Below are positions 1 through 61,070 of a DNA stretch of 63,959 nt, piece by piece. Source of the stretch: Gracilinanus agilis (Eukaryota); contig NC_058131.1 of the NCBI RefSeq assembly GCF_016433145.1, positions 600,774,279 through 600,838,237 on the forward strand, written 5' to 3'. Made by a program: the position numbers and the translations under genes. Each line of letters begins with the position of its first letter. Position 1 is the first letter of the stretch. The notes beneath the pieces were generated by a model. It saw only the letters and a list, made by a program, of their open reading frames with translations. It was not told the DNA's origin and did no database searches.

Positions 1-240
1 GGCTGGGATGCCTGGATCCCCAGCTTATCTCTGGAGTGCAGAGCCTTAGGAATAAGTATAGCATGAGTCTGCCCCCATCTTTACAGAACTCACAGTGAAC
101 GATGTGATATTTAAATGAAAATCAAGGACCATATTGCAGGAAAAGAAATTACAAGGGGTGGAGGATCAGAGAGGCAATAGATAGTCCTACCTACTTTCTC
201 TCAATGAGGATATATAGGTAGATATTATTTCTGGGTAGAT

Positions 241-288
241 TACATATATATATATATGTATATATATGTATGTATGTATATATATGTA
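241..288. repeat. (TA)n/(TATG)n microsatellite
   Basis: tacatatatatatatatgtatatatatgtatgtatgtatatatatgta. Confidence 0.95.
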
Positions 289-479
289 TAAACCTCAGGC
301 CTTTAATGAGCCCCCTTGTTCCTCCCCAATAGCTGCCTGAGATGCCAGTCGCCATGTTTCTCTCCCCTCTCAAGGTCCCCGACCCCTCAAAACATGGGAC
401 ATCCTGTGAACCTTAAAGATCAGCATTGCCTGCGGTCTCCTCTTTTCTCTCCTTGAGCTGATTTCAGCCTGTCCAGGAC

Positions 480-760
480 CATGGGGGTGGGAGGGGGTCT
501 GGTTGTGCGAGTTGCCCACTCTAGTTGGGTACTTGCTAGGTGTCTTTTGTGTAGTGTTACACCCTCCGCACCTACGCACTGCGGCAGTCTTCCCTAGTAA
601 TAGGTGCTCGGTGCGTGCCCTCCCCCTCTTTCCCGTTCACTTCCCCCCTCCCCAAGAAATGGTATGACCCATGTTGATTACCTGTGTCCCGGCCAGGAAG
701 GGAGTCTGCCTTTCAGTCTCTTCAGCAGCCCAAGCAAAAGGGCAAGGCTGGCTCTCCCGA
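480..760. promoter_or_regulatory. Probable promoter/5' region of the RERG-like gene (possibly shared with a divergent gene off the left edge)
   Basis: Locally raised CpG content directly upstream of ATG 760. No specific motif is claimed. Confidence 0.35.
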
Positions 761-3700
761 TGGTCCTCCGGTTCCCCTTGCGCAGAAGTGCCAGCTTTAC
801 CCTGGAGTGTAGGACCTTGTTTGAGACACCTGACCCCAGCATCCTTACCATGGAAGCCAACGTGTTGGTGATGGGAGCAGAAAATGTCGGGAAGTCAGGT
901 GAGAACCTCCATCCTACACAAGCTTGTCTTGAAAGGAAGGAGTATTGGGGGCAGAACCTGGGAAGCGGAAGGCTGACGGAGTGCCATTTGGTATCGGATG
1001 AGAGGAACCTGTTGACAGATTGACTATCTGCCTGACGCCCCTGGCTGCCAAGTGTTACACAGCACCCATCTGGACCATTTACGCCTTGGTTACTGCCACT
1101 ATGCCTGGTCCAGAGTTCAGTTAGCACTCAATGGGTGCCCTTCTGTGAGAAAGACCTTGGAACACAAGCAGCTCTCTCAGGGCTTAGGGTCCTAGGCGAT
1201 ATGGATGATATATTGTCCCCCAAATGGCTTCTCTCTCTGACCTTCTGTTTCTCTCTCCCTTTCAGCCCTGACTGTTCGCTTCCTGACCAGACGATTCATT
1301 GGAGAATATGGGGACCTGGGTGAGTCCTGGCCTGGCTGTTGCTGGGCAGATGTTGCTGATTGTTTCCTCCATGTGCAGGGCAGAAAACGTGGCCTGCTTA
1401 ACAGAATGGGATGTGTTGGTTAATTGGATGAGGAAGTGACAGAAGTGATAATTGGCACAGCCTCCGGTGTCCAGCCCTAATTATGACCCTCCTGGGGACC
1501 AAACTGCTAATGAGACTGATAATGTTCTCCTCATGCTCAGAATCCTCTCGTCTCCTTTCCTCTATGAGCTCAGGAAACCCCCTCCAAGTCCTGCCTTTCC
1601 TCTAGAAGCCTCCATCTCTCCTTGAGCTCCCTGCTTTTCTCTAACCCTGGTTCTGTCTCTTTCTTCATAGTTAGGATTCTCTAATTTATTTTTCTTGACT
1701 AGCAGCTGCTGTCTTGTCCAGCCACCACAGCTCCATACAGTGCTCAACACGTCCATAAACATATGAACCTTCTCTTATTTGATGTCAGAATGTCCAGTCC
1801 TACCTGGCTGTCCTGCTCCCTGGTGAACCTTCTTTACTGCCTCTATCCTGGTCATAACAACCAAATCTAGCTCTTAGTTTGAGCCATTCCTTTGAGACAC
1901 TTATCCTACCTGTCTGGAGAATCCATCTATGTTTGGAAGATCTACTCTTCCCCAGTAGGTTAGTGACCAATCCCAGGCCAATGTCATAAAGGTTCCTTTG
2001 ACATGGGCAGGGACGGGGAGATATAGAGAGGGAAAAAGGAAAGAGGCATGAGCAGAAGGTGATAAGATTGGTCATCAAAATTGATATCTTCCGATGACTA
2101 TTATCTCCCTTAGTCATCTTCTGGAGAGAGAATTTACAGGCTCGTTGCACCAGTACAGCTACTAAACATTTCCGGGGTCTCCAGAACAAATTTAGGAGCC
2201 ATGGATATCTCCTTACTTTATAGACATGCCTTGATTTGGCTTGGAAGATTGATTACCACCTTATTCACCAGATTTGGCTCCAAATGATCTTTGGTTGTTT
2301 CCAAAAATCAAGTCTACTCTCAAAGAACAAAGATTCCTCACCATTGATGTTACAAGATTATTTTTGCAGCTCTGAAGAAAATACTATGCTAGATGAGTTT
2401 AAATGCCTGCTCTATGTTAGACATTCTACTGACCAGTAGGGGTAAAAAGATAAAGAAATAAGTAGCTCCTATTCAGAGAGTTTGTATTTTAGGGAGAAAA
2501 TAAAAATGCTGTGTTGAAGAAAAACCCTTGTCCTCTGAACTTTCAATATCCAAATCTTGTGCTCCCTCCATGCTTACTTCCTTGCTATCACGGGAGACCT
2601 GGAGATGACTTGGAATCAGTGTGGTAAAGATGAGAAGGTAATAGAAAAGGAAAAGGGGCTTGGTGGAAAGGACTGAAAAATAGGGTGTCTTTTGTTCTCT
2701 GGCGCAGAATCAATCTACAGCCGAAGCTTGGACGTGGAGGGCAGGAAAATTCTCTTCCACATCTGGGACTTCCCCAGTTCCCATGTGAGTATACCCTCAC
2801 AAGCAGGGATTAGCAATTCCTTAGTGGAATGAGAGACGAATGGAGGTTTCATCTTGAGCCCTTGGGGACAAGAGAGCAAGGGCACCAGACAAGCCTTCTC
2901 TTAAGCCTGGAGTTCTTGACTAGTACACTGGACTCAAGAAGATCTGAGTTCAAATCTTATTTCTGACACTTGCTAGTTGAGTAACCCTGGGCAAATCACT
3001 TAACCTCTTTAAGGATGTCTCCCCTTCTCTAAAGGGGGGCTATAACAGTTTTTTGTAGTGCTTATCTTACAAGGTAGTCGTGTGGTCTAAATGAGAAAAC
3101 ATATGTTAAGTGTTTTAGAAACCTTACAACACTAAAAACGTTAGCTATTATTCCATGATACCCCCTTGCCCCAGCTGGCAGTTGGGGACCTATGTGGCAT
3201 CTTTCCTGTTCCTCTTGCTCCCCATTCATGCCTCGTGAAGAGCGAGCCACGCAGCCATGACACACTCATCAGAGCAGGTTTTCTCCCCAGAGATTCTAGC
3301 AGCTCCTGATTCTGGGTCCACATGGTGCAATGGTTCTACTAGTTCTGTGACCTTGGGCAAGACAATCATCTTCTCTGCCTTCAGCTTTTCTACCTGTAAA
3401 TGAGGAGATTGCATTAGATGACCTAATATTCTCAGATTAGATGGCATTTAAGGTTCTTCTCTAAAATTCTGCCCATTAAACATTTATTTTTTACATATCT
3501 GGCCTCAGACACTTCCTACCTGTGTGGCCCTGGGCAAGTCACAATCCTGTTTGCCTAGCTCTTGCCTTTCTGTCTTAGAGTTGTTACCAAGACCAAGAAA
3601 GTAAGAGGTTTTTTTTCAAGTTTTTATTATGTGCCAGGTTCGAAGAATATAAAGGAAAGCAGAAACATGGTCCATGACTTCAAAGGGCTCATGTTATAAT

Positions 3701-4551
3701 GGGGAGATAACATGCCAAGAACTATGTATGTCATGTAACTGTATACAGGATAAATAAGTTATAAATGGGAGGCGATTGCAAATGAAAGCCCTTAGCAGTG
3801 GAATGGGATAAGGAGAGAGGGGCACTGGAGGGGGACTCTTCTAGAAGATTCTATCTTCCTTTCATATTTAACCTGAGCCTTTGGGAATAAGATATTTTAG
3901 GAAAGGGGAGGGAGTGAGATGATATTTTAAAGTCTGATAGACCAGGTTTCCTGAATTACCAGGAAAGAAGTTAAAAATGCCTATCTGCCCTTGACCAGTA
4001 CCTTAGAAAAAAGAAGGAACTGTAGCATCTAAATCTTCCCTAGATCCACAGATTCACCTTCCACTTTTCAGTGGTTCTTTACCCTCTTAGTATCCAATCT
4101 CAACTTCTTTTCCTCCTCTTCTCAGGGTCAGGATGACCAGCACTCCACAGAAGAGAAGAGGATCCAATGGGCAGATGGTTTCATCTTGGTCTACAGCATC
4201 TGCGATAGGGCCAGTTTCCACATCCTTCCCACGAAAGTGCAGTTCATTAAGGTGGCCAAGGAAGGCCAGAGCCCTGAGAAAGTGCCCATTGTCATTGTGG
4301 GCAACAAGAGGGACCTGGGACACCACCGGGCAGTTTCCATTGAGGAGGGGCGGCTTCTGGCTCTGACCCTGAATTGTGACTTCTATGAGGTGTCGGTAGC
4401 TGAGGCGTCTCATGGAGCCCTTATGGTGTTCCAGGGGCTAGCCCAGCACTTTTGGCAGGCTCGACTGCCACCCCGAAGAGGCATTGGGATCCGAGGTATT
4501 GTTAAGAGTATGTCGGCAGTATTTGCTCGAAAGAGAACAGATTCCTTCTAA
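760..4551 (+). CDS. RERG/RERGL-family Ras-like small GTPase, 4 coding exons: join(760..898,1266..1319,2708..2784,4126..4551); 231 aa (201 aa if ATG 850 is used)
   Basis: All introns are GT-AG with matching phases (1,1,0) and the ORF is uninterrupted. Translation: MVLRFPLRRSASF...MEANVLVMGAENVGKS|ALTVRFLTRRFIGEYGDL|ESIYSRSLDVEGRKILFHIWDFPSSH|GQDDQHSTEEKRIQWADGFILVYSI...IVGNKRD...EVSVAE...KSMSAVFARKRTDSF*. The P-loop GxxxxGKS, ALTVRFLTxRFIGEY, WADGF and NKRD motifs, the lack of CAAX and the exon layout all fit the RERG/RERGL/RASL branch. Confidence 0.9.
2256..2348 (+). mobile_element. Mariner (MARNA-like) transposase remnant
   Basis: Translates PPYSPDLAPNDLWLFPKIKSTLKEQRFLTID; YSPDLAP is the mariner transposase signature. 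Confidence 0.85.
2915..3135 (+). mobile_element. MIR-type CORE-SINE remnant
   Basis: gagttcaaatc...ctgggcaaatcacttaacctct core and MIR-like tail. Confidence 0.7.
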
Positions 4552-6587
4552 GTCATTCACCTAGCATCAGTTTCTTTCCTAGTAAATTATGTTAGTCAGT
4601 CAGCCATATATTTATTGAGCACTTAATATGTATAGAACACTGTCTAGACTGGGATAGATTAGGAGGACAGAAATAGAGCATCATTCCCTGTCCTCCATGA
4701 GCTTTTTAATCCATGTGCCCCAATGCCCATCCCACCACCTAACTCCTTTCTCTAGGGAGTTTACATTTTCCCAGATCAGTATGTCGTCATTCCAATCAGG
4801 ATAATCTTGGCATGTAATCAACGCTATTACAAAACCCATGGGCCACCCTCTCTAGGTATGGCCTATTTCCCTAAACTTTAGCAAAATGTGGCATTTCAGT
4901 GGCTCAGAGGTTCTCCATATTCTGAGGGTATCTTTTGTGGTGTGGCACCACCTCTGGTCTAAGGTATCCAATACAACTGCCCCCAAAGTCAAGGGCAATA
5001 TGGCATAATGGAATTAGAAGTGAATTTGGAGAAAGATCAACTGGCTTTAAATCCTGGGTATGTTTCTCTGACCTTAGGGAAGCCCTCTTCCCAGGCTTAC
5101 TTTCCACTTTTCTCAGATGAAGGGATAGAACCTGATAATCACTAACATCCCATCCAGCTCTAATATTTAATAGTCCTAATATTAGGTCCTTATATGTAAG
5201 CAGAAGGTTTTTAAGCCCCAGAGGATGGATCTTTCTGAAGTTATGTTTTGTGACTATAGAATAAAATTTCTAGGATGGCAACCTTTGCATTCTCCATAAT
5301 GACTTGGGGAGAAAGGGGACAACTTATGGTCAGAGTTCATAGGTGTCTGGTATAGCAGGATCCCCGGAAAGTTTTTCTCCAAAAGCTTTTGGTGACCAGA
5401 TTTACACACACACACATCTAGCATCTTGCTTTATTTCCTGTTTCCAAACTATGCGAGTCCCCTTCTGTTCTCCCCTGATGCCCATCTTTTTGCTTCTCTG
5501 TTGCTAAACTCAGTTGGCACTTTTACTGGGAATTCCAAGAGTGCTGTTCAGGCCTGGCAGGATACCATCTTTATTATCCCTGCTTTTGCTCCAGAATCTG
5601 GTCCTACTGGTAGGAACCAATGAGAACTTCAAGGGCCCAAACCCTGGCCTTTAGGTAGCTAGGCACTGTCTGCAGCAGCCCACTCTCCACTCTGGAATTC
5701 TATAATTAAGAGCCAACCCCAGCAAAACTTAAATCATTGTTCTTCCCATTCTTTTGGTAATCTTTCAGCCTTTTTATTCCTATTCCTGTTCAATGATTCT
5801 GTGTTGTCTGTAACCTGGCATTCTACAGATTCTTACAATCAAGTCCCCACCAAAATCAGACTCCATTTGGATCCTAACTGTCTCTTCTCCAGCTTTTGCC
5901 TCCATCCCATTAAAAAAAAAAAAAAAAAAAAAAGAACAATGTGGTATGTCAGCCCCATAGGGCCTTATTAAGTGACTTGCTAATCTCATTAACTCTTTCA
6001 AATTGATTGTGCCTCTGCTAGAGTAACTGATGCTTTCTAAAGGGAGATAGTGAAGAAATTAATTTCTTTTGATGAGAACTTCAGAAAATTGAAGGGAGGT
6101 TGTTCAGCAGGCCTGTCAAACTACATTACTTGCATAAAAATAACCAATTCCAAATAGCCTCATAACTGACAATCGTCTTAAGGTTCCCCAACCATCTGGC
6201 TAACCTAAACCAGAGGAATATTAATGCTCCCTGGACCCCATTCTCCTATACACTGAATCAGCAGAGGCTTCTCTAAATCCTCAACTGAGACAGGCAAAGT
6301 CCTCTGGTTCTATGCTTCTGGGCTTGTCTTACTCAGCAAGAGGGTAAGATTACAGAAGAGTAATTCATCTAGAGCCTATGATAATAATAAGAAGTGTTTT
6401 CATGGGCTTTTTCAAATTAGGTGGCTCAGTAAGATGAGGAAACCAAGCTTCACAGCACCAGGCTTGCCTGACCCTGATAGTAATGCAGGTAAGATCCTCC
6501 AGGATATCAGGAAAAAGTGACAGGGGAAACCTACAGCCAAGTCGACAGGCATATTTATTGTACAGAAGCTTATTGTATGGGTAGTTA

Positions 6588-6827
6588 GGGGGCCCAGTGG
6601 AAAGAGGGCAGGGCCTGAAATCAGGAAGACTCATTTTCCAGAATTCAAATGTCACCTCTGACACTTTCTAGCTGTGTGACCCTGGGCAAGTCACTTAATC
6701 CCATTTGTCTCAGTTTCCTCTTCTATAAAATGAACTGGAGAAGGAAATGGCAAACTCTAGTATCTTTGTCAAGGAAACCCCAATGGGGTCATGAAGAATT
6801 AGACACGACTCAAAATGACTGAACAAG
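6588..6827 (+). mobile_element. Mar1 marsupial CORE-SINE
   Basis: CORE plus RTE-derived tail (ggagaaggaaatggcaaac...gactgaacaa). Confidence 0.8.
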
Positions 6828-8199
6828 TTTATTATATTGTGTTTTATTGTATAGCTACAATAGTTGAGGCATAGGAGCAGTTATATTTAGGGAGATTCTG
6901 CTACCCTGGACAGTCCGTGGCATTGACTCCCAGCAGGGTGGGACAGGAAATACACAGTAAAAAGAGGCTTAGAGAGCCTGAAGATTTCCCACAGAGAAAG
7001 CACAGTAAGTACAGTGTGGCTTGGAGGTGAAAGAGTAATTTTAAGGAGTTCCCTGGTGTAGAAATAGTTAGGGATGGTCTAGTTTACTAGGGTTAGTTGA
7101 AAGAAGGGACTTTTGAGATAAGCCCTGGGAAAGGATTCTGGGTAAGAAAGGAATTGTGAGTCTACAACTGAAAATAACTGAATTTCACTTTCTTGAATTT
7201 TGACCAAGCTGCAGGGAGGTTTTGTCTCTCTGCCTACAATTCCCATCAAGCTGAAGTTCAGTTATTTTCATTGTAGACTCACAATTCTAACTGGCCTCAA
7301 GGAAGCCCAGGTGTCCTCAATTTCAGGTCTTCTTGTCCTTCCCTTCTCTCAAGTTCCTCATTTTCTCTCCCTTTCTGTTGTCCTTTGCCCAGGCTACCGT
7401 CTCTGTGTTTGGATTACTCTACACTCTTCCTTCCTTAGTGAATCTCCGCCTTTCTTAAGATCAGACTCAAAGATCCCCCTAATTGTGTCTGACCATCCTT
7501 GTCCCTGTCTCTGATTTTCACAGTCCAGACACGTAATACAGTCTCCCTGTCTCTACACACTGAATAAAAGTTGTCAAATGATAGGCCAGATCAGTGGGCA
7601 GAAACTGGGCATCTCTGAGACTTGGAAGCACCAGCAATCGTGAATGAAGGCCCACAAAGTGACCCCACCCAGGTTCTCCTCCCAGGGAACTGATTCGATG
7701 TGCAGGAATACTTCTGAAACTAAAATTCTGCTTTCTCCTCCCAGGGAATTCTCTTGAGTGGCATCAGGGTAGAACTTTTGCATTTAGCAAAGTATGTATA
7801 TACATATGAGTAAGAGGCATCTGTGAGGGTCACCGTAAGGGGAGCCTGAAGAAGCTTAGGAAGAAGGTGCTATGGGTATTGGCTCAAATTCTATTGATGT
7901 AACTAAGGTAATAAAAAATGATTTTGAGATTCATTGTAGTTGTGCATAATAGAAGTACCAGGGTGGAAAGAAACCCAGAGTGGTCCTCTCTTTTATCACC
8001 CTGCCCCTAGGATAAGCCCAAATCAAAAGGCAAATGGAAAACCTGAGAAGGAAGGTGTCATTTTAATAGATAAAGTAAGTCTATAAACAGTCTCTAACCC
8101 ATAGCAATGGAGAAAGTTACTATCTAGATGAGCCTAGCAAGTCATGAGACCTATTTTTAAAAAGCACCTGTAGCTTACATTTTGCACACCCAAATGAGT

Positions 8200-8415
8200 A
8201 TAGTGTCCCTTAAAGAAGCCCCTCGGAAAGCCCAGACATTTATTCTAACACATGCTGCCATTGCTCAGTACTCTGGGAACAATTCTTTGGGAATTCTCAG
8301 CTTGCCATGTGTCCTTTTGAATCACCTGAATGGTGACAAACTTTTCTTCTTTGGAAGATGGATTTGATTTTTGGAAACAGCCAAAGGTCATTTGGAGCCA
8401 TGTTTGGCAGGTGAT
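8200..8415 (-). mobile_element. Second mariner (MARNA-like) remnant, inverted relative to 2256-2348
   Basis: gatttgatttttggaaacagccaaaggtcatttggagcca aligns to the reverse complement of the 2256 copy. Confidence 0.75.
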
Positions 8416-9143
8416 TCATCTGAGAAATTTAGCTGGGGGTCCAAAGCAGAGGGAGGTGGCTTTGGAGTGAAAGGACCTGGATCTGCATCCTGACTCCCTG
8501 CGTGAGCCTGGCAGGAAGGACTCACCCTCCTGAGTGAGGAGACCAACCTGAAGAGGCGAAGCCTCATCTGGCCGCTGATGTTGGGTCCTATTAGGGAGAC
8601 AAGAGGTGAAAGCTGGCCTTCTCGTGGGGCTACAAGGAGGCCCCGGAGGCTTATGCCAAGGAAAAGTTCTAGATGTGTTAGGGCAAGGGCTGCGCCACTG
8701 AAGGACTGCATGGCTCCCAGGAGGCCTACCCTGACGGGCACGACTCCAACTTAAATGAAGGAGGCAGCTCTCAAAGTCGGCTCTGACTCAGTTCTCCTGA
8801 GAGCAACCCGGGGTGATAAGTTAGTGGGGCTCACTCATCCCTGGTTGCAGTGACCCCAACCCCCAGCAGCCCTCAGTTTTGCCCTCAGGATGGCCCGAAG
8901 GCTCGCGGCACCTTCCTGGCAAGCGGGCAGGGATGGGGCACTCAAGGGCTCCGGAGTCTAGTGAGTGTGTAGGCAGGAGGCCGCTGCAGAGGACCGAGTT
9001 CGGTCAGGATCTCGGCTTTGCTCTTCTCTGTGGGGGCCGCAGGAGGAAGCTGGGAGTGGCGGCGGTGGCAGGGGCGCGCGCCAACCCGTGGGCCCAACAG
9101 AGGGCACCGAGGCAGGGCTGGCCCGCAGGGACCTCGAGCCCCA

Positions 9144-12100
9144 TCAGTTCTTCTTGTAAAGCTGGCTGTAGTGCATGCGGTTGTAGATGGGCTCCATGAC
9201 GCTGGGTCGGAAGAAGCTGTCACTGACGCGGCGGGTGGGCTTCTCCCGGTGGTAGAAAGAAAACATGGAGCGGCCGGTGGGGGTCTCGGGCTCAAACGTG
9301 GCGCCACGGTGGAGGGAGCCACGCTGCTGGGGCCCCGGGTCCGACGCTTTCTGCTGAGCAGAGAGCTTATCTTCCAGGCCCAGGAAGGACAGCGCACTGG
9401 AGTTTCGGGGACTCCTGAGGCTGCCACGGTGCTGGGCTTTGCTCGGGGCCTCGGCGGTGGGGGAGTGGGCGCCTTCGCTCCCCTCTGGCTCGCTCGGGGG
9501 GTTGTCTATGTCCCGGAACTCACTCTCTGGCTCCATCAGGGACAACCTGGGGAGCTGAAGAGTCAGGGGGGGTTAGAGAGGAGGCCTCCAGGAGCTACCG
9601 CTGGGCCTAGCTCGGCCCCCCCTTGGCTTCTCTGTCCCTACACTGTTCTCTCTGTCCTGTTAGGATGGGGTTGTTTTATTCACTTTACATTTCCTGAGCA
9701 ACAGCAAGGGAGAGGCACTAAGGAGCATATTGATAGCTCAAATTTCTACAGCACTTCAGGGTTTACAAATACTTTTCATCCTAACTTTCAAATGTATACA
9801 GAAGGGGGCAGTTAGGTGGCTTGGTGGATTGAGAGCCAGGCCTACAGACGGGAGGTCCAGGGTTGAAATCTGGCCCCAAATACTTCCTAGCTGTATGACC
9901 CTGGGTGAGCCACTTAACCCCAACTGCCCAGCCCTTCCTGCTCTTCTGCCTTGAAACGGATACTTCATATTGATTCTAAGACAGAAAGTAAAGGTTTTAA
10001 AAAATGTACAAAGGGCCCATATTATTACCATCCCTACTTTACAGATTAAGTGATTGAAGCCTAGAGACGGGAGGTCCTGGGTTCAGATGTGACCTCAGAC
10101 ACTTCCTAGCTGTCATTTAAACCCCTTTGCCTAGCCCTTACCACTCTTCTGCCTTGGGATACATAGTATTGGTTCTAAGGTGCAAGGTAAGAGTTTCTAT
10201 CAAAAAAAGAAAAAAGGTTAAGTGATTTGGGGATGGTCTCAATGGCAAAGAATTGTTAAATTCAGAATAACAGAGCTGAAAAGAATTCTGGAATCACACA
10301 GGCCAACCTCCTTATTTTGCAAATGAGGAGTCTGAGGCTCAAAGATGGAAAGTTAGACTAGAATATTGGACCTAAGATCCTTTCCATCTCCAAAGTTCCA
10401 TGACGCCTTCATTCTCATTTTTCCTCAATTAGTTCATGAGAACTAAGACTTGAGCCAATTCTCCCGTTTCCTCCTCCAGGCTTGGCGAGAGGACATGAGC
10501 TCAACCTCATCCCTCATCCGGCCTTGGGCACTGCATCCTCCTTTCCCTTCGTGCCCTGGCATCCTCCCTGGAGACCCTCCATCAGGCCTCTGGGGCAGGG
10601 GTGGCCGCAGGGGACTCACCGGGACGTAGTGCACCACTGTGTCCACCACGTTGTCTGTGACGCCTTTCAGGGCGTCCGATAGCGACATGGCCCTGCTTTT
10701 GGTAAAGGTCTCCTGGCCAGAAGTGAGGTGGAACAGCCTCCCAGCAGTGTTGTTCCAGATGGTGACGGGTACCCACTTGACAGTGGAGACGGTGGTCAAG
10801 TAAGCAGACTGCAGAGTGTGAACCACACTGCCCACAAGGCTCTGGGTCCTGGGCCTGGGCTGTGAGCAAGATCTCAGGTTAGCCACTTGGGCATGACCTC
10901 CCAAACAGCCCCCCACTCCCCAAGCCATGCAGATGCTCCCTGCACAGCCGTCTTCCCGGGCTTCTTCGCCATAGCTCTAAGTAAGTGCTCTTGTACCTCC
11001 TGGCTCTCCCCACTGCCCCTCACTCCCTCTGCTCTCTCTCTATGGGATTAGGGAAACATAAATCCATTTCTGTGTGAGGAGGCCAACCTGAAGAGGCAAT
11101 GAGAGTGGAAAGAATATTCACTGGCTTTGGGATCCAAAGGAATGAGCTCCAACCCGGACTTGGTGATTTACTCCCCATGTGTCTGGGCTCCCCCTCCCTC
11201 TCTATAAAATGGTGGGGCCAGACCAGATGACCTTTGTGGGCCCTGAAGCACACCTGAAACATGCAGTGGAACAATGTTGGATCTGAAACACCATCCCTAT
11301 TCTGTCTATCTAAAAGCTAATTAGCCTGGCCCTTCCCCAGTTGCCCTTTTAAAAGACACAATTCTCCACTTGGCTCATTCTTTTCACCATATTTAGTTTG
11401 TTCTCTTCCTTCCTCACTTCGGGTTCCTCTTCTTCTTCCTCCTCTTCCTCCTCTTCTTCCTCGTCCTCCTCTTCTTCATCCTCCTCCTGAGCCCAATTGT
11501 ACTGCCAAGTTCCCCTTGATGTGGATCGGGGTCTGGACACCACCTGCATGGCAGCTGACACACTCCACTGGGCCATACTGCTCTGGGAGGAGGCCAGACA
11601 ACAGTGAATGAGCAAGGATGGTGCTGGGGCAGGAGGGAAGGCAGGGAGAATAAAAGGAAGGGGCAGTGACTGCCAAAGGGCCTAAGGCATCCAGACCTTG
11701 CCAATCTTCCCAATACCCAGAATCAGAACCACGTGGCTCCTGTACATTCCAAAGTAAATATTCCTATGGGGAGGGAGGTGTAGGTATAGCAACTTTAAAA
11801 AAAGAATTTGAAGGTGCAACTGGGTAGCTCAGTAGATTAAGAGCCAGGCCTAGAGATGGGAGGTCCTAGGTTCAAATCTGGCCTCAGACACTTCCTAGTG
11901 TTATAAGTAAAGTTAAGTGGGTGCAGAGAGCAGTCATGGGACAGCAGAGTAAGGAATTCTAGAATTCTGCTGGGGAGAGTCAGCTTGTTCTGGGGATTGA
12001 TTCTCTCTCTGGGTTTACCTGAAGAGGAACTGCATACCTTCCTTTGCTGGCTGTGGTATATCTGGACTTCTCCATCCTACCTGCTTTCCTGTTACCTGAC

Positions 12101-18100: not shown

Positions 18101-21100
18101 AAGAGGGAAAGAGGGAGGGAGGCAATTTGGATCATATAATTTCAGAAAACATGTGGAAATCTGTTAATACATGTGATTGGTAAAAATAAATAAATGAAAA
18201 TCTAAACTAAAAAAACCCAAAACTTCCCAGGAACACCTGATCTGAGGAACATAGGGTTAAAAAGGCAGTGAAGTTTAGCCCTAGGCATCGAGGAAGTGAA
18301 ATTTCATAGACAAGAACTAAGTCTTTTAGCAGCCTCTCCCTCTCCCCAAACCATCATCTTCTCAGGTTCTTCGAGGAGAAGAAGAAAGAAATTCTGAAAC
18401 CTAAGAGTGTGTATATGTGGTCTGATTACTTGAAAAGGAAGCAGGCAGTAAGATACAAAGTATGAGGAAGAGACTTCCTTACCTTTTCTGGAGGGTACTG
18501 GAGAGCAGGAATCTTTTCTTCCAGGTGGTCTAATCCACGACAGGCTAGTTCATTGGCAGCTGTGACTGAAACAAAGAAGAGCACTGGAGTTAACCAATCC
18601 ACCTTACTTTGAGAAACCAGAGATTGCTGGGAAGGATATAAGACTACAGAACATTGTCAGACCATGAACAGAACACTTGTCATCTTCAAGACTAGACCTG
18701 AACCCTAGAGTTTGATCACAAATTAACACCACCTCCTTGGGGTCCCTATGGCCTGAGACTAACTTGGGACCAAGAGGGATTCCTGAGGCTATTGCACTTC
18801 TAGGGTAGCTAGGAAAAAGACAAGTCTTTTGTCCAAGGATTATTTTTTCCCAATGATTGAAGGCTAGTAGGAAAACTGGTGAACAGATAGTCCCCTTAGC
18901 AAGTTTTTCTCTGTACTGACTTGTGGGGCCTCAGAGGCTATACACTCCCCAAGGCATAAAGGAACTTAATACAGTACCCCGAGAATCCCTATTCATTGGA
19001 CCAGGAGTGTCAATTGAAACAAAAAATCTGCTTGATCCTTTGAAGTATTTATTCTAAGATTCTGGTCTTTCTACTGATAAATCTTGCTAAAATATCATAC
19101 AATATCACAGAGGCCTGGGCCCAAGGACAAAGGTCTTTAAGTATGACTCTTCTTATTGTTGATATCTGGAGGTCTCCAAGATACATGTCTCCTTGAGACA
19201 GTGGGAGGTATCTGACCTATTGAAATCTAAGTGAAAAATGTGTTCAATGTGGAGAAAACAGTGGACCATTTAAACTGATATAAAAAATTATGAATTTTCT
19301 GGTACTGGAAAAAAATAACTGAAGTCTGAATCCATGCTAGACTCAACATTGCCTCATTGCTGCCAGTGGTTGCATTGCTTAAGTGGGTGATTTGTCTGTT
19401 ACTGGCATCTTCTCCTGCCCAGTATGTGCAGATGTTTTCACACTCCACCTTCCCAAAAACTTTTATGCCTAGGTTGGAATGTCAATGGAAATACAGAGTT
19501 TTCTGAAGGTTGAGTAAGGAAATTCAAACAGATAGATAACCCCATGTCCCTGCAACTCACATTGGGTTGACAGCCGTCGGACCACAGGCTCCATGCTCCA
19601 TGCAGCCAGGTTGCTGGCTCCTTGTACTCCTTTCTCATAGGCATTACATACAGAGGCCACAAGGGGATGGGCTTCCTTGGTGCTGGTGTAGGTCTTTTGG
19701 AAACATTCACAGGTGCCACTTACCACAGGCAACTGAAGGACTCTCTGGAGCACATTTTCCTGCTCCTAAAAAGGAAAAGAAACATTTAAAAATTACTTTC
19801 ATTTCTCTTCTTTTTCCACCTCTCTCTTTCGTCACCCTGCCATTTCTGTTGGCAGAACCTCATGCTCACTTTTTCTTTACGTAAGATTGGGCTAAGCTGA
19901 AGGGTCACACTTAAGGAAAAGAGAATGCTATCATGCCAGGGGCCTCTGGTCATCTCGTTCATTACGTGGAAGAGAAAGTAAGAAGGTATACACGAATATA
20001 AAAGACTTATTGGTTATAGCCTGGGTTTTCATCAAAAGTCAGATTCTCTTTATTAACTGGCCAAGACATATTCTTTCCCTCCTTCCAAATGAAATTAAAG
20101 TTCAACTCAATCAGAAAGCCTTCCATGATCAACAACACCCAACTTTCCAAGCCACCAGCAAAATTTTCTGCCTTAATTACTAGAAAACAATCTGTCTATT
20201 TCATTTCTCTCTACAGACCTTATAATCTATCATGTCTCTGCTGTCCTAAACATTTTTTGGATTTCATAATATCCCAGTTAATGTTACTGACTTGTTGATT
20301 GAACACTGAAATGGAATATTACTTTGTGAGATTAAAAGATATAAAATAATGGAAGCTTAGCATTAGAAAGGACCTTAGAAGCTATCTAGTCTAATCTCTC
20401 AGACAATTCAAGAATTCTTTCTACAAAATAATTAACAGATAGTCAATGATCTCTTGCTTAGCTACTTCTTCTACTGATTGAGTTTACTACTTAATGAAGC
20501 AGCTCTTCCATAACTGGATGTTTCTAACTATAGTACTAGAAAGTTCCTATAGATATGGAAATTTTTTACCCTATAACTTCTCTCCATTGCCTACAGTAAT
20601 GCTCTCCAAAGCAACATAGAATATCTACTCCTTCCTTTACACGACAACCTTTTCAATAGTTGAAGAAAGGTATCATGTCTCTCTCTCCTTTTTACTTCTT
20701 CAGGTTAAACATTACATTTCCTAATATGACATGGTTTTTAGCTCCCTCACCATCATGTTTCTCTCTTGTTTGTTAGTGTTCTTCCCAAAATATAGCACCA
20801 CAAATTAATCACAAAATGTGGCCCCATCAATCAACAAAGGGTACAATAGAGCAACTGTGTCCCATAATATAGATACCATCCTTTTAAAATGTAGCCTAAG
20901 ATTATTATTGGTTTTAGTAGCTTCATTATGCTGTTGGTTCATGTTAAGCTTGAGGTTAGCAGAAACCACCATATTATTTTTTCAAATGAACTTTTGCCAA
21001 GCTAGATCATTCCTATCTTTTATCTATACTAATAATTTTGTGAACCTAAATATGAGACTTTATATATACATATTATATACTTTTATTCATCTGGGTCCAT

Positions 21101-35400: not shown

Positions 35401-38341
35401 GTCCTCAGGATAATTTCTATGAAACAGAACTCATAAGAGGAATATTCTGCACAAGTTCCATAAGGCCAAAGGGCAATACAAGTAATGAAAATGCAACATA
35501 AAGGTGATGGCAAAGGACTTTGAAATAATCTAGTGAGCAGAAAAAAGCAGGCATTTTGTTGACACAAGTGGTGGTAATAAAAGCAGATGTTGATCAATGA
35601 GAGAAATAGCTCAAAAAGCCATCTCCTGTTTAAACCATGTACACAAAAAAGATCAGCTAAATTGTTGGTGTTGAATTATTTTAAAATTTCCATAATAATT
35701 TTACTAAGCAATCTATTATGCAACTTACAATATAAAGGTCCCATAAAAGAATATGTGTAACACAGGTAATGTAATATTTATAGAGAAGACTGGCCTTTGA
35801 ATCAGGAAGATCTAGGTTCAACCCTGAGTACCTACTAGCTCTAACCACTGACAAGTCAAGCAACTATCTTGCAGATTTGTACTGGTGGGGAAAGTTCTAA
35901 AACCAGTGAGTTTCTGCCACTAATGAAACTGAGAAACCTGGCAACATAATATGGACTACTACATACAAAACAAGGGATATATTTTCTTACATATGTGGCT
36001 TTCTAATAGGGTTAAATATAATAAATGGGAAAAAATACAAAATACAAGTAAAATTTGACTTTAATGAATGATACCATTTTACTATCCAGTTCATTAGAAT
36101 GTTATTTCCATGTATCAATCTACAGTCCCTAACATTGTTTCCTAATACAGACACAATGTATGAAACTTTAAATGACTTATATTCACAAGTCCCAGTCCAT
36201 TTAGCAATCTATATAGTTAGCTAACTACTTCATAGCAAAGTGCATCTTTTTTATACTGTATTCCTATAACCATATTTCAACATCTATGCCATTAAACATT
36301 CTGAACAAATTTTGGCAATTTTTTTCTTTTTATTTCAAAAAAGAAAAATGCTTTCTAGTCATCTAGCAGTCCACAAAAGAGCTATCCCCTTTGACTTGGT
36401 AACCCCACTCCTGGGAATATAATCCATGGAAATAATTAAGCAGAAAAACATTTCATTGTACAAATATATTTATAACTGTGTAATTTATAATAGCAGAAAA
36501 CTGGAAACCACTTACATGTCCTGTAGTTAGTTAGAAGTAGGTAAACTATGGTATGCATACTAATGTAATAAAAGCATGATGTTGCCCTAAAGAATGGCAA
36601 ATCCAAAGAATATAGAGATATATGAGAATAAATAAAAAAGAAACAGAATTAAATCCTGTATACATACAGACAAATCACATTGAAAATATTTGGGCATATG
36701 AGTAAACACATATTTGTACTCCCTGGCTAAAGTTACTCAGCTGGCCTCAGATTGGGACAAAAAATAAAATATTTCCCTGAAAGCAAGTTTAAAGACTAGG
36801 GAAAGACCCTGTCATTTTAAAGGAAGTCTGCTTCTCCTGTTAGTGAGGAGATTGGGGGGGGAAGTAGGTAATATAATAAAATAGAGCAAAGAACTGGGAT
36901 CTGGCAAAGTAAACTACAATGCTCATCTGTATATGCATCCTCTGTATGCTTATGTTTATATTTTATTGAAGTGTGAATGAAATATGACATTTCTGATGTA
37001 GTGGGAAGCTCATTATAGGAGTCGAAGAGTATTAGAAAAACAGGAAAAGCAGCCAAATGAAATTGTAAATTTAACTACCTGAATCTGAATTCAAGGAGGT
37101 TGATTACCAACCAAGTTTTTATGAGGCACAGTGAAATATTTTCTAACTAGATGTGTTTAATATTTTATAGGCAAGGAACTATCAAATCCTGTGATGCAGT
37201 GGAAAAAGTACTGTTATCTCAAATTGGAAGGCCCAAGTTCAAATTCCTGCTCTGCCACTTACTGTGTGGCAGTGGGCAAATCATTTAAGGATCTCAGTTT
37301 CCTGATCTTTAAAATAGGGGCCATGTAGGAGCAGCTGGGTAGCTCAGTGGAGTGAGAGTCAGGCCTAGAGACAGGAGGTCCTAGGTTCAAACCCGGCCTC
37401 AGCCACTTCCCAGCTGTGTGACCCTGAGCAAGTCACTTGACCCCCATTGCCCACCCTTACCAATCTTCCACCTATGAGACAATACACGGAAGTACAAGGG
37501 TTTAAAAAAAAAAAATAGGGGCCATGCTACATAATCTCTTAAGTCATTTAAAACTCTAAAGCTATGATTCTGTTAACTAAAAGAGAGGAATAGTGAGCAT
37601 TAGTAGGGCATCTCATTTCTAAGTATATGACAAAAAGGAATTCATAAAATTATTTCTTAGGGCATTTGTCATCAGTGCTTCTAGATTTGTTCCCCTTCTC
37701 AAAAGGGAGGACCGTAAAATCTTCTTTTTAAGAAAATTCCAGAAGAGATTCTCCGAGGTTTCCTTTCACTGAGAAAAATTATCAAGAAACAAAGTTACTG
37801 ATTTTGGTTCTAGGATGTTAATGCCATTAGGAATTTTGAAGGAGTATACCGAATTCACTGGGATTACACAAGAGAGGAATTTGTACCACGGGTCTTTGGT
37901 ATGAGCAGGGGTTGAGATGGGGTTGGGGGAAGGAGTTTTCACTCATATTTGAATAGCTGGTGGTTTCCTGAAGCTTTATTTCCTTTTACCCCTAGTCTGA
38001 TACGTTTAAAGATTTTGGGAATTAGAGATGGTCGGTTAGCCTATGTCCAACACTTCTAATGGAACCTGATGGATTCAGCTTACCCCAAGCGGGGCAAAAT
38101 GTGAATAAGTCGGGGCCCGAGGGATTCTGTCTTTTCGCTGACTCGCCACTTTTCGGGTTCATAAAAATTTTTTATTATTTGCAGCTGAGAGCTAGTAGGG
38201 CCAAAGGTTATGGGGGGAAGACGCAGTCCTGGGGCTGCAGGGGCGCACGGTGCACCGGTATGGGAGAAGGGAAACCCAGACTCACCTGAAGAGCCGGTCC
38301 CTGCCCTGAGTCTGGTTGGTGAAGCGAGTGAAAGTGTCCAT
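29422..38341 (-). CDS. PEX11A: Peroxisomal biogenesis factor 11 alpha: complement(join(29422..29993,35196..35311,38286..38341)); 247 aa
   Basis: MDTFTRFTNQTQGRDRLF|RAIQYTCMLLRYLLESKADREKVVMKLKKLESSVSSGRK|WFRLGNVVHAVQAT...HPPLLLDTVKNLCDILNPLDQLGIYKSN...YPQMRLRTC*. Exons of 56/116/572 nt with GT-AG introns. Confidence 0.98.
30503..30920. mobile_element. hAT-type MITE (TIR CAGTGATGGGCAAACT) with a SINE (30709-30900) nested in its right TIR
   Basis: Body nearly identical to 51049-51246. The SINE TSD is aaaaagtttgc(t/c)ca at 30695-30708 / 30901-30914. Confidence 0.85.
32896..33001 (-). mobile_element. 5'-truncated SINE with 17-bp TSD
   Basis: tgacttggagcattttt at 32879-32895 and 33002-33018. Confidence 0.85.
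33185..33840 (+). mobile_element. 5'-truncated L1 insertion with 15-bp TSD
   Basis: aaaatccctattctg at 33170-33184 and 33841-33855; A-rich tail. Confidence 0.9.
37327..37515 (+). mobile_element. Young SINE1-type SINE with TSD
   Basis: aaaataggggccatg on both flanks. Confidence 0.9.
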
Positions 38342-38379
38342 CTTGCCTGCCCACCCAACCATTTCCCACTGGGGTCAGA

Positions 38380-38860
38380 ACAGGCCAGAGTAGGGCCCGC
38401 ACCGGAGCAGAGGGCGCCGAAGTCCCCCCGGGATCGGGTGACTAGACATTTGGCTTGCCCGAGCGGGCCGAGCTCTCTCCACTTCCATAGGGGCGGGCAC
38501 TACCCAAAGGGTAGGGCGGGGGCTGGAAGAGGGAGGGCAGAACATCAAGTACGAGCCAGAGGGAAGTGTGGTCGCCCCTCCTCCCCCACAGACCGGAATC
38601 TAGAGCCTCGGGCAGAGCCGGAAGAGGTCGCAGCTTCCAGGACTTCCGGTTTGACCCGGAAGTTACAGTTCCCCTAGCAACAGAGTTTGAGAGACGCCGA
38701 AAAGACCGAGCACGAATCTTCGCGGCAGAACGGATACACAGTTTCCAAGGAGCCCTGTCGGCTTCAGTTAAGACGTCTCTGTCCAACCTGGGACCCGGAA
38801 ACCTTCGAGGCTGGCTGCCACCTAGATGGAGCGTCCTCCAGTCTCCTTGGGTTTCTCAGG
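38380..38860. promoter_or_regulatory. Bidirectional GC/CpG-rich promoter shared by PEX11A (-) and WDR93 (+); includes the probable non-coding WDR93 exon 1 (donor AG|GTAC at 38860)
   Basis: This is a CpG-dense stretch in an otherwise CpG-poor window. It has GC boxes (GGGGCGGG ~38489, GGGCGGGG ~38514), three ETS/GABP CCGGAAG cores (~38617, 38643 on -, 38656) and the RFX X-box GTTCCCCTAGCAAC at 38668-38681. Confidence 0.8.

Positions 38861-43489: not shown

Positions 43490-61070
<17,581 letters not shown>

What the first reader, a model, noticed from the sequence alone, without database searches (positions are those of the whole stretch)
760..4551. Intact, unnamed RERG-family GTPase gene tail-to-tail with PLIN1, apparently missing from the human locus
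Seen: four exons with canonical GT-AG sites, matching phases and no stop or frameshift, inside introns full of old repeats. This pattern implies purifying selection. Established: the block PLIN1-PEX11A-WDR93 is conserved at human 15q26.1, where I recall KIF7 lying directly beyond PLIN1 with no Ras-family gene in between. The protein is RERG/RERGL-like but is neither, by sequence. Inference: this is an ancient RERG paralog kept in marsupials (and probably non-mammalian vertebrates) and lost in at least some eutherians. It sits next to a lipid-droplet/peroxisome gene pair, so it is a functionally uncharacterised signalling gene. It is the best candidate for new biology in the window, although automated pipelines may already list it as an unnamed RERG-like locus.
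Basis: partly seen in the sequence, partly recalled or inferred. Interest (0 to 1): 0.8.

Follow-up and report, generated by a model that had tools for sequence, protein, structure and literature searches.

The report
Overlooked RERGL-type GTPase beside PLIN1
This is a real, intact and conserved Ras-family gene lying between KIF7 and PLIN1; it is an ancient sister of RERGL that fish, frogs, reptiles, birds, echidna and marsupials keep, for which no placental-mammal copy was found, and databases already list it under the misleading automatic name "RERGL-like".

Summary
Exons 760-898, 1266-1319, 2708-2784 and 4126-4551 (+), all GT-AG, give a 231-aa Ras-family protein. It is identical to RefSeq XP_044518421.1 of Gracilinanus agilis, so the gene is already auto-annotated as "RERGL-like".

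- Orthologues occur from ray and teleost to echidna and 11 marsupials. None of the best 120 clusters is eutherian.
- Exon sizes match in opossum, echidna, owl and frog.
- The order KIF7 / gene / PLIN1 holds in marsupials, echidna and owl. PLIN1 linkage also holds in milkfish.
- dN/dS is 0.09-0.15.
- In a careful tree this clade (100/100) is separate from true RERGL (100/99), which contains human, mouse and pig. At least seven species carry both genes.

New point: no marsupial or monotreme appeared among true RERGL hits, and a preprint failed to find RERGL in the Tasmanian devil. Complementary loss is therefore likely.

Two eutherian contigs show no exon remnant within 3.2-4.6 kb past PLIN1. 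The whole interval and the human locus could not be checked. No splice-junction reads were obtained.

The protein keeps G1, G4 and G5 but lacks Thr35 and the DxxG glycine. It has no CAAX box and carries conserved RRxS-type end motifs. It is probably an atypical, phosphorylation-regulated GTPase; that part is inference.

Two first-reader notes of this scan touch this window, one on this gene's G motifs and one on the PLIN1 C-terminus. The scan has no note of this gene on other DNA.

The parts
760..898 (+). Exon 1 (coding, phase-1 end): start codon, disordered N-terminal extension with the PLRRSAS motif, strand beta-1 and the P-loop GAENVGKS
   Evidence: sequence, donor AG|gtgaga. The N-terminal motif is conserved from frog to marsupial. 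The first in-frame upstream stop is at 601. AF2 gives pLDDT below 50 for residues 1-27.
1266..1319 (+). Exon 2 (54 nt): helix alpha-1 and a shortened switch I (RFIGEYG-DL) that lacks the Ras Thr35 equivalent
   Evidence: The same 54-nt exon is found in echidna, owl and frog.
2708..2784 (+). Exon 3 (77 nt): strands beta-2 and beta-3 and the divergent G3 motif WDFPSSH in place of DTAGQ
   Evidence: The same 77-nt exon is found in echidna, owl and frog.
4126..4551 (+). Exon 4 (426 nt including the TAA stop): the rest of the G domain (G4 GNKRD, G5 EVSVAE) and the conserved basic C-terminal tail ending RKRTDSF
   Evidence: (Pfam Ras, E = 9.5e-17, on this exon alone)
4552..5265 (+). Probable 3' UTR, up to the first AATAAA at 5260 (inferred)
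   Evidence: signal position. Words from 4126-4700 are held by 18 runs classed as RNA from a related species.
2987..3005 (+). Core of a dispersed SINE copy inside intron 3 (context: introns carry old repeats)
   Evidence: 19 copies in the window against 0.01 expected
1..355 (-). 5' end of the neighbouring kinesin gene (KIF7), head-to-head with this gene. Its annotated coding range ends about 405 nt from this gene's ATG.
   Evidence: a 1271-aa Kinesin product at locus 1-9596, with locus 10001 equal to window 760. The same neighbour is seen in echidna, owl and frog.
9144..9545 (-). Last coding exon of PLIN1, tail-to-tail, 4592 nt beyond this gene's stop codon
   Evidence: The Perilipin Pfam hit is on the N-terminal exon 19472-19753. 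A Perilipin neighbour is also seen in echidna, owl, sugar glider and milkfish.

Best explanation
The window holds a working protein-coding gene for an atypical Ras-family small GTPase. I call it X here. It is a third vertebrate member of the RERG group, of the RERGL type.

Evolution. X and RERGL separated before jawed vertebrates diversified, and lamprey sequences group with X. X has stayed in one place, head-to-head with KIF7 and tail-to-tail with PLIN1. PLIN1 linkage goes back at least to the bony-vertebrate ancestor. X was most likely lost on the eutherian stem. Marsupials, and perhaps monotremes, seem to have lost the other copy, true RERGL. If so, the RefSeq name "RERGL-like" in marsupials hides a paralogue.

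Mechanism (inferred from sequence). The protein should bind guanine nucleotide, because the G1 Lys-Ser, G4 NKxD and G5 SAx motifs and the Ras fold are intact. It lacks the switch-I Thr35 and the DxxG glycine, and it has an acidic residue at the Ras-Gly12 position. I therefore predict little or no GTP hydrolysis and no classical GDP/GTP switch. It has no lipid anchor. Control is more likely through expression and through phosphorylation of two conserved basophilic sites: RRSAS near the N-terminus (tetrapods) and R-x-x-S-x-COOH at the C-terminus (nearly all orthologues, and RERGL too). These could dock 14-3-3 proteins, as happens in RGK GTPases.

My confidence is about 0.9 for identity and evolutionary history, about 0.8 for absence of a working eutherian copy, about 0.55 for complementary loss of RERGL in marsupials, and about 0.3 for the phospho/14-3-3 mechanism.
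For: Gene model and identity:
- Orthologues span marsupials, echidna, crocodilians, birds, turtles, squamates, tuatara, amphibians, coelacanth, ray-finned fishes and a ray.
- Exon sizes are the same, 139-148 / 54 / 77 / 426-429 nt, in four vertebrate classes.

Synteny:
- Kinesin, X and Perilipin lie in the same order in opossum, echidna and owl.
- A kinesin gene lies upstream in frog.
- A Perilipin, or a perilipin-sized gene, lies downstream in wombat, sugar glider and milkfish.

Selection:
- dN/dS is 0.09-0.15 against echidna and 0.12 against owl.
- Identity among marsupials is 220-231 of 231 residues.

Phylogeny:
- The X clade has support 100/100 and the RERGL clade 100/99. Both follow the species tree inside a shared superclade (97/89), with RERG outside.
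- Anolis, Sphaerodactylus, Geotrypetes, coelacanth, gar, Arapaima and Megalops each carry both genes.
- The RERGL clusters hold human NP_079006.1 and mouse NP_001121562.1.
- Chicken RERGL sits with PIK3C2G, PLCZ1, CAPZA3 and RERG on chromosome 1 (PMC12810574).

Eutherian absence:
- None of the best 120 X clusters is eutherian.
- None lies in the amniote part of the X clade among the exhaustive 50%-identity representatives.
- There is no exon remnant within 4.6 kb and 3.2 kb past the eutherian PLIN1 stop. All four exons were found in the echidna, owl and frog controls.

Marsupial RERGL:
- No marsupial or monotreme is among the best 120 RERGL clusters or the roughly 110 listed members.
- RERGL was not found in the Tasmanian devil (preprint 10.1101/2025.08.12.669816).

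Expression:
- Words from exon 4 and the 3' UTR are held by 18 runs classed as RNA from a related species, several with only 24-84 million letters.
- Intron 2 words are held by DNA runs, and among those RNA runs only by the two deepest.

Motifs and fold:
- The AF2 model has pLDDT 74, and its TM-score to K/H/N-Ras is about 0.9.
Against: - No splice-junction reads could be laid. Expression and splicing in this species therefore rest on word sharing and on the Gnomon model.
- The eutherian contigs are of unknown species and stop before KIF7. Remnants nearer KIF7, or a relocated copy, are not excluded. The human locus was not inspected.
- Absence of marsupial RERGL rests on ranked lists cut at 120 hits and on one preprint, not on a genome search.
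- All biochemical statements are read from motifs. RERG, the nearest solved structure (2ATV), is a normal GTPase to my knowledge. Some orthologues keep a Gln at the Ras-61 position.
- The N-terminal RRSAS motif is not seen in fish orthologues (30 of 75 complete sequences).
- The predicted C-terminal helix has low confidence (pLDDT about 50) and is only weakly amphipathic (hydrophobic moment 0.27).
Confidence: 0.75

Rival explanations
1. X is simply the marsupial orthologue of RERGL, as its RefSeq name implies, moved to a new chromosomal position.
For: It carries the same automatic name in all databases. X and RERGL share derived features: loss of Thr35, Ser in place of the DxxG glycine, and a similar basic tail ending in Ser-x. 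No separate marsupial RERGL was seen.
Against: X and RERGL form separate clades with support 100/100 and 100/99, and each mirrors the species tree. At least seven non-mammalian species carry both. The position beside KIF7 and PLIN1 is ancestral, seen in owl, frog and milkfish, not new.
Confidence: 0.02
2. Eutherians still have a working X gene, but it is unannotated, sits in poorly assembled GC-rich sequence, or has diverged beyond easy recognition.
For: The KIF7-PLIN1 interval was only partly covered. The hit lists are cut at 120. A 12-member subclade of unidentified representatives exists inside X.
Against: Hundreds of annotated eutherian proteomes are in the searched collection and give many RERGL clusters but no X cluster, although X orthologues down to 58% identity are listed. 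The exhaustive representative search puts no unknown sequence beside echidna and marsupials. Protein and DNA searches find nothing past PLIN1 in two eutherian contigs.
Confidence: 0.08
3. The open frame is a prediction artefact or a gene in decay with no function in marsupials.
For: There are no junction reads. The promoter region is not a CpG island, with observed/expected at most 0.39.
Against: dN/dS is 0.09-0.15. Identity is 95-100% across 11 marsupial species. Exon structure is the same across four classes. Small RNA-classed runs hold exon 4 but not intron 2.
Confidence: 0.02
4. X is a conventional GDP/GTP switch like RERG, cycled by exchange factors and GAPs. The terminal serine motifs have no regulatory role.
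For: The nearest solved structure by sequence is RERG (2ATV, E = 8.9e-30). The nucleotide-binding motifs are intact, and many orthologues keep a Gln at the Ras-61 position.
Against: Thr35 is missing and switch I is one residue shorter. The DxxG glycine is replaced in all orthologues. Position 12 is Asp or Glu in most. The C-terminal R-x-x-S-x-COOH motif is kept in 122 of 131 sequences, which argues for a function.
Confidence: 0.25

Closest known systems
RERGL (human 12p12.3; NP_079006.1)
   Same: Same superclade (97/89) and about 38-40% identity. Both lack Thr35, have Ser in place of the DxxG glycine, lack a CAAX box, and end in a basic stretch followed by Ser-x-COOH. Both are about 200-230 aa with a Ras fold.
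   Different: Separate clade, and both genes occur together in many species. The locus differs: KIF7/PLIN1 for X, against PIK3C2G/PLCZ1/CAPZA3/RERG for RERGL (PMC12810574). X has an N-terminal extension of about 30 aa with PLRRSAS in tetrapods, one extra residue in G3 (D-x-P-x-S against D-P-C-S) and the tail ...SMSAVFARKRTDS[LF] against ...INNVFGKRRKSV. RERGL is present in eutherians. No eutherian X was found.
RERG (PDB 2ATV)
   Same: It is the best solved-structure match by sequence (E = 8.9e-30). It belongs to the Ras family, has no CAAX box and shares the FLT[KR]RFI helix.
   Different: RERG keeps the canonical YDPT switch I and DTAGQ motif and lies outside the X and RERGL superclade. To my knowledge RERG binds and hydrolyses GTP (Finlin et al. 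2001, from memory).
RGK GTPases (Rad, Gem, Rem1/2)
   Same: They are a resemblance in likely mode of control, not kin. They have non-canonical switch regions and no lipid anchor. N- and C-terminal extensions carry basophilic serine sites which, to my knowledge, bind 14-3-3 in Gem and Rad. REM1, REM2, GEM and RAD are among the PDB matches (E about 1e-18 to 1e-20).
   Different: X lacks the RGK C-terminal ...CxDLSVL motif and their long N-terminal extensions. Neither phosphorylation nor 14-3-3 binding of X has been tested.
Clade D: Xenopus LOC100145332 and a passerine 237-aa "RERG-like" protein
   Same: It is another unnamed vertebrate RERG-family gene found here. It carries a similar N-terminal PLRRS[WV]SL motif.
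   Different: It has canonical YDPT and DTAGQ motifs and a long, different C-terminus, and it lies outside the X and RERGL superclade.

Membership tests
Ras-family small GTPase (Pfam PF00071) | Profile match above the curated cut-off, and a Ras fold | tested here: met
   PF00071 matches at E = 1.2e-27, 96.9 bits against a cut-off of 21.6. The AF2 model has the six-strand, five-helix order. Foldseek TM-score by target is 0.88-0.91 to K/H/N-Ras.
Ras-family small GTPase (Pfam PF00071) | G1 P-loop GxxxxGK[ST] | tested here: met
   GAENVGKS is present. G39, G44, K45 and S46 are invariant in 44 sequences. Glu occupies the Ras-Gly12 position (alignment).
Ras-family small GTPase (Pfam PF00071) | G2 switch-I threonine (Ras Thr35) | tested here: not met
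   Switch I is EYG-DLESIY, one residue shorter than Rap2A or RERG, with no Thr at the aligned position.
Ras-family small GTPase (Pfam PF00071) | G3 DxxG(Q) | tested here: not met
   The motif is WDFPSSH in marsupials and WD-x-P-x-S-Q in most orthologues. Asp is kept and the glycine is replaced by Ser.
Ras-family small GTPase (Pfam PF00071) | G4 NKxD and G5 SAx | tested here: met
   GNKRD is invariant. EVSAAE is found in 123 of 131 sequences, and EVSVAE in didelphids.
RERGL orthologue group (human RERGL) | Falls inside the clade that holds human and mouse RERGL | tested here: not met
   The clades are separate, with support 100/100 and 100/99. Human and mouse RERGL are in the other clade's clusters.
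RERGL orthologue group (human RERGL) | One gene per genome (no co-occurrence with another member) | tested here: not met
   Anolis, Sphaerodactylus, Geotrypetes, coelacanth, gar, Arapaima and Megalops carry both X and RERGL.
RERGL orthologue group (human RERGL) | Locus beside PIK3C2G, PLCZ1, CAPZA3 and RERG | tested here: not met
   X lies between KIF7 and PLIN1. Chicken RERGL is listed with PIK3C2G, PLCZ1, CAPZA3 and RERG (PMC12810574).
RERG orthologue group | Clade membership, and canonical YDPT and DTAGQ motifs | tested here: not met
   RERG is outside the X and RERGL superclade. Both motifs are absent from X.
PLIN1-linked RERGL-type group (X; unnamed) | Position between KIF7 and PLIN1, the four-exon structure 139-148 / 54 / 77 / 426-429 nt, and a tail ending R[KR]R[TI][DEN]S[LFMV] | tested here: met
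   Synteny. Exon structure. Tail motif in 119 of 131 sequences.
RGK GTPases (considered only as a functional analogue) | Conserved C-terminal CxDLSVL motif and RGK-type G3 (DxWE) | tested here: not met
   The tail is ...ARKRTDSF and G3 is WDFPSSH. X is not a member.
RGK GTPases (considered only as a functional analogue) | Phosphoserine-dependent 14-3-3 binding at both termini | not testable with these tools
   Only consensus-like motifs are seen: RRSAS at residues 8-12 and RKRTDSF at the C-terminus.

The most novel reading that the evidence does not exclude
X is a GTPase-dead adaptor controlled by PKA and 14-3-3 that works with its neighbour of more than 400 million years, PLIN1, in hormone-driven lipolysis. 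Its loss on the eutherian stem would then be tied to PLIN1 gaining its own C-terminal PKA site. Eutherian PLIN1 ends ...RKKS, while opossum and echidna end ...YKKN and owl ends ...FKKD. Marsupials would conversely have dispensed with RERGL.
Probability: 0.06. Interest if true: 0.8.

Novelty: new member of a known kind. Interest (0 to 1): 0.45.

Why it matters
Catalogues of the vertebrate Ras family are built on human and mouse. They list RERG and RERGL but not this gene, which most vertebrate classes keep under strong constraint. Marsupial and bird annotations give both paralogues the same name. Orthology tables, gene-family counts and GWAS candidate lists can therefore mix them up. One example is a goose "RERGL" on chromosome 17, where I could not tell which paralogue is meant. 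If eutherians lost X while marsupials lost RERGL, this is a clean case of complementary loss of an old duplicate pair. Zebrafish, Xenopus, chicken and opossum would then be the only models in which X can be studied. The conserved end motifs give a concrete and cheap biochemical hypothesis to test.

Tried and rejected
No junction or tissue data were obtained.
- Marsupial coding DNA for a within-marsupial dN/dS. The wombat, sugar glider and the window's own assembly returned "no DNA, file too large". I used echidna, owl and frog instead, where dS is near saturation or fully saturated.
- Full-length eutherian PLIN1 as an anchor. This was not possible because queries must be unspliced references. 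I used the last PLIN1 exon, which gave only short Logan contigs of unknown eutherian species.
- Walking outward from the end of contig L004 returned the same contig.
- A tblastx search for KIF7 exon 1 in those contigs found nothing, so the interval is not bridged.
- Idea that the C-terminal helix is a lipid-droplet amphipathic helix: rejected. The hydrophobic moment is only 0.27 and model confidence is low.
- Idea of a CpG-island bidirectional promoter shared with KIF7: not supported. CpG observed/expected is at most 0.39.
- Literature searches for the zebrafish clone name, RERGL2, rergla/rerglb, and RERGL together with PLIN1 and KIF7 found no description of this paralogue.
- The "MgRas" novel marsupial Ras genes of the preprint are single-exon and unrelated to X.
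- The Atlas look-up of an unidentified X-like representative gave taxa only at phylum level.
- Ray and lamprey synteny were uninformative. The ray had no neighbour within 10 kb, and the lamprey gene has an ADAM10-like neighbour.


Full report
**What is in the sequence.**
Reading 1-5400 and joining 760-898, 1266-1319, 2708-2784 and 4126-4551 gives 696 nt, which is 231 codons plus TAA with no internal stop. The donors are AG|gtgaga, GG|gtgagt and AT|gtgagt. Each acceptor follows a pyrimidine tract and ends in cag. The junction phases are 1, 1 and 0. Exon 4 alone matches Pfam Ras at E = 9.5e-17, and the whole protein matches at E = 1.2e-27. That includes the repeat-bearing introns: a SINE core sits at 2987-3005, one of 19 copies in the window against 0.01 expected.

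**Source and annotation status.**
- The protein is 231/231 identical to XP_044518421.1 of Gracilinanus agilis and 230/231 to the Monodelphis protein.
- The gene span recorded in assembly GCA_016433145.1 is 3792 nt, equal to 760-4551. The window is therefore from the agile gracile opossum.
- Eleven marsupial species share one 90%-identity cluster, at 220-231 identical residues of 231.

**Neighbours.**
- In the source assembly a 1271-aa kinesin gene (KIF7) lies head-to-head. Its coding range ends about 405 nt upstream of the ATG. A 544-aa gene lies tail-to-tail downstream.
- In the window that downstream gene is PLIN1. Its last coding exon is 9144-9545 on the minus strand, and its PAT-domain exon is 19472-19753 with a Perilipin Pfam hit (E = 3.3e-30).
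- PEX11A (29.4-30.0 kb) and WDR93 (43.5-46.6 kb) follow.

**Orthologues and synteny.**
A word-indexed search with exon 4 listed, among its best 120 clusters, the following groups:
- marsupials at 97% identity, echidna at 76%, and crocodilians, birds, turtles, squamates and tuatara at 69-76%;
- amphibians at 64-69%, and coelacanth, bichir, gar, bowfin, sturgeon, many teleosts and a ray at 58-66%.

No eutherian was listed. The order kinesin / X / perilipin recurs in echidna and owl. The kinesin gene is upstream in a frog. A perilipin, or a perilipin-sized gene, is downstream in wombat, sugar glider and milkfish. Exact spliced mapping shows the same four exons in opossum, echidna, owl and frog: 139-148 / 54 / 77 / 426-429 nt. 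The stop-to-stop gap to PLIN1 is 1.8-4.6 kb.

**Selection.**
Pairwise dN/dS is 0.149 (NG86) or 0.086 (YN00) against echidna and 0.124 against owl. Comparisons with frog are saturated. Saturation makes dS too small, so these ratios are, if anything, overestimates. Together with near-identity across marsupials, this shows purifying selection.

**Is it RERGL?**
- An exhaustive search of 50%-identity representatives, with cluster look-ups, showed that gecko and Arapaima each have a second, different gene ending ...GKRRKSV.
- Searching with that gecko protein returned a large clade with many eutherians, birds, reptiles, amphibians and fishes. Its clusters contain human NP_079006.1, mouse NP_001121562.1, rat, cow and pig RERGL.
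- In a careful maximum-likelihood tree of 60 sequences, X with two lamprey sequences is one clade (100/100) and RERGL is another (100/99). Each follows the species tree.
- The two clades sit with invertebrate relatives in a superclade (97/89). RERG and a further vertebrate clade, "D", are outside it.
- Anolis, Sphaerodactylus, Geotrypetes, coelacanth, gar, Arapaima and Megalops appear in both clades.
- A chicken study places RERGL with PIK3C2G, PLCZ1, CAPZA3 and RERG on chromosome 1 (PMC12810574). That is a different locus from KIF7/PLIN1.

X is therefore an old paralogue of RERGL, not a recent copy and not RERGL itself.

**Eutherians.**
- There is no eutherian among the X hits.
- When the unidentified representatives are added to a tree, none joins echidna and marsupials.
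- Using the last PLIN1 exon I recovered eutherian-type PLIN1 fragments, which end ...ILGRAQYSQLRKKS. Two contigs carry 4.6 kb (L004) and 3.2 kb (L005) beyond the PLIN1 stop.
- tblastn with five X orthologues gave only noise in those contigs (best E = 0.07). The same search found all four exons in echidna, owl and frog, with E down to 1e-67.
- Sensitive blastn aligned only the PLIN1 exon and a repeat.
- The contigs do not reach KIF7, and walking failed. The interval is only partly covered, the species are unknown, and the human locus was not examined.
- A synteny paper lists PEX11A, PLIN1 and KIF7 as the left flank of WDR93 in all therians, but it considers only named genes (PMC10445033).

**Marsupial RERGL.**
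Neither the best 120 RERGL clusters nor the roughly 110 listed members of ten mammalian clusters include a marsupial or a monotreme. Eutherian RERGLs rank well inside that list. A preprint that manually annotated Ras genes in the Tasmanian devil could not find RERGL (10.1101/2025.08.12.669816). This points to complementary loss but is not proof.

**Expression.**
Words from exon 4 and the first 150 nt of the 3' UTR are held by 18 runs classed as RNA from a related species (share 0.09-0.32). Several of these runs have only 24-84 million letters, far too little for genomic contamination to assemble. An intron 2 control is held by DNA runs of that species at 0.09. Among the RNA runs it is held only by the two deepest. 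This fits mature mRNA. Junctions were not seen, because read laying failed.

**Protein features**.
- G1 is GA[ED]xVGKS, with an acidic residue at the Ras-12 position.
- Switch I is one residue short and has no Thr35.
- G3 is D-x-P-x-S-[QH] in place of DxxGQ.
- G4 (GNKRD) and G5 (SAA) are intact. Didelphids have SVA, a Val at the Ras Ala146 position.
- No sequence has a CAAX box.
- The tail R[KR]R[TI][DEN]S[LFMV]-COOH is present in 119 of 131 sequences. R227 and S230 are at least 90% conserved, even when RERGL is included.
- Tetrapods add an N-terminal extension with PLRRSAS. AF2 models it as disordered.
- The G domain is a confident Ras fold.

From this I infer nucleotide binding without a classical switch. 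I also infer control by basophilic kinases and possibly 14-3-3, by analogy with RGK proteins. None of this has been tested.

**Prior knowledge.**
A 2011 survey counted four RERGL-type genes in zebrafish without separating them (PMC3141262). Searches for clone names and candidate symbols found no paper on this paralogue. The gene is thus annotated but undescribed.

**Verdict.**
- This is a real gene, already in databases under a misleading name.
- It is an ancient RERGL-type paralogue.
- Its absence from eutherians is well supported but not proven at the DNA level.
- The complementary absence of RERGL in marsupials is a new lead.
- Interest is moderate.

Noticed in passing
window 9144-9170 (-); L001 19081; L002 13999; proteins P0300-P0324: PLIN1 ends ...YSQLYKKN in this opossum...YSSLYKKN in echidna and ...TFKKD in owl. 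All eutherian fragments end ...YSQLRKKS. The terminal RKKS serine therefore looks eutherian-specific among the species sampled, the same split as the presence or absence of X.
   Followed up: partly
proteins P0187, P0188, P0282-P0298: There is a further unnamed vertebrate RERG-family clade, "D" (Xenopus LOC100145332; passerine 237-aa "RERG-like"). It has canonical YDPT and DTAGQ motifs, an N-terminal PLRRS[WV]SL motif like that of X, and a long C-terminus. It lies outside the X and RERGL superclade. Its distribution in mammals was not examined.
   Followed up: partly
proteins P0136, P0143-P0146, P0151, P0152, P0158, P0192, P0198, P0200, P0209: A 12-member subclade (SH-aLRT 99) inside X holds both lamprey genes, a partial whale-shark protein and nine unidentified representatives. 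It may be a second X-type paralogue in cartilaginous or jawless fishes, or a long-branch artefact.
   Followed up: partly
window 4126-4551, residue 181 of the protein: Gracilinanus and Monodelphis have EVSVAE where 123 of 131 relatives have EVSAAE. The Val is at the Ras Ala146 position. To my knowledge, substitutions there speed nucleotide exchange in Ras.
   Followed up: no
window 49524-51054 (+): There are retroviral remnants inside the WDR93 region: a gag-like zinc knuckle ORF and a retroviral aspartyl protease ORF (PF00077, E = 2.3e-11).
   Followed up: no
window 62527-63525 (+): An open 332-aa L1 ORF1-type frame is present (Transposase_22, E = 2.6e-14).
   Followed up: no
window 38210-38880, both strands: Overlapping GC-rich ORFs on both strands lie between PEX11A and WDR93. 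This is probably a CpG-rich promoter region rather than coding sequence.
   Followed up: no
L010 1-3473: The lamprey relative of X lies 6.5 kb downstream of an ADAM10-like gene, not beside a kinesin or perilipin gene.
   Followed up: no
PMC11592244 (goose GWAS): A goose meat-pH association is assigned to "RERGL" on chromosome 17. Birds carry two genes with that name, so it is unclear which paralogue is meant.
   Followed up: no
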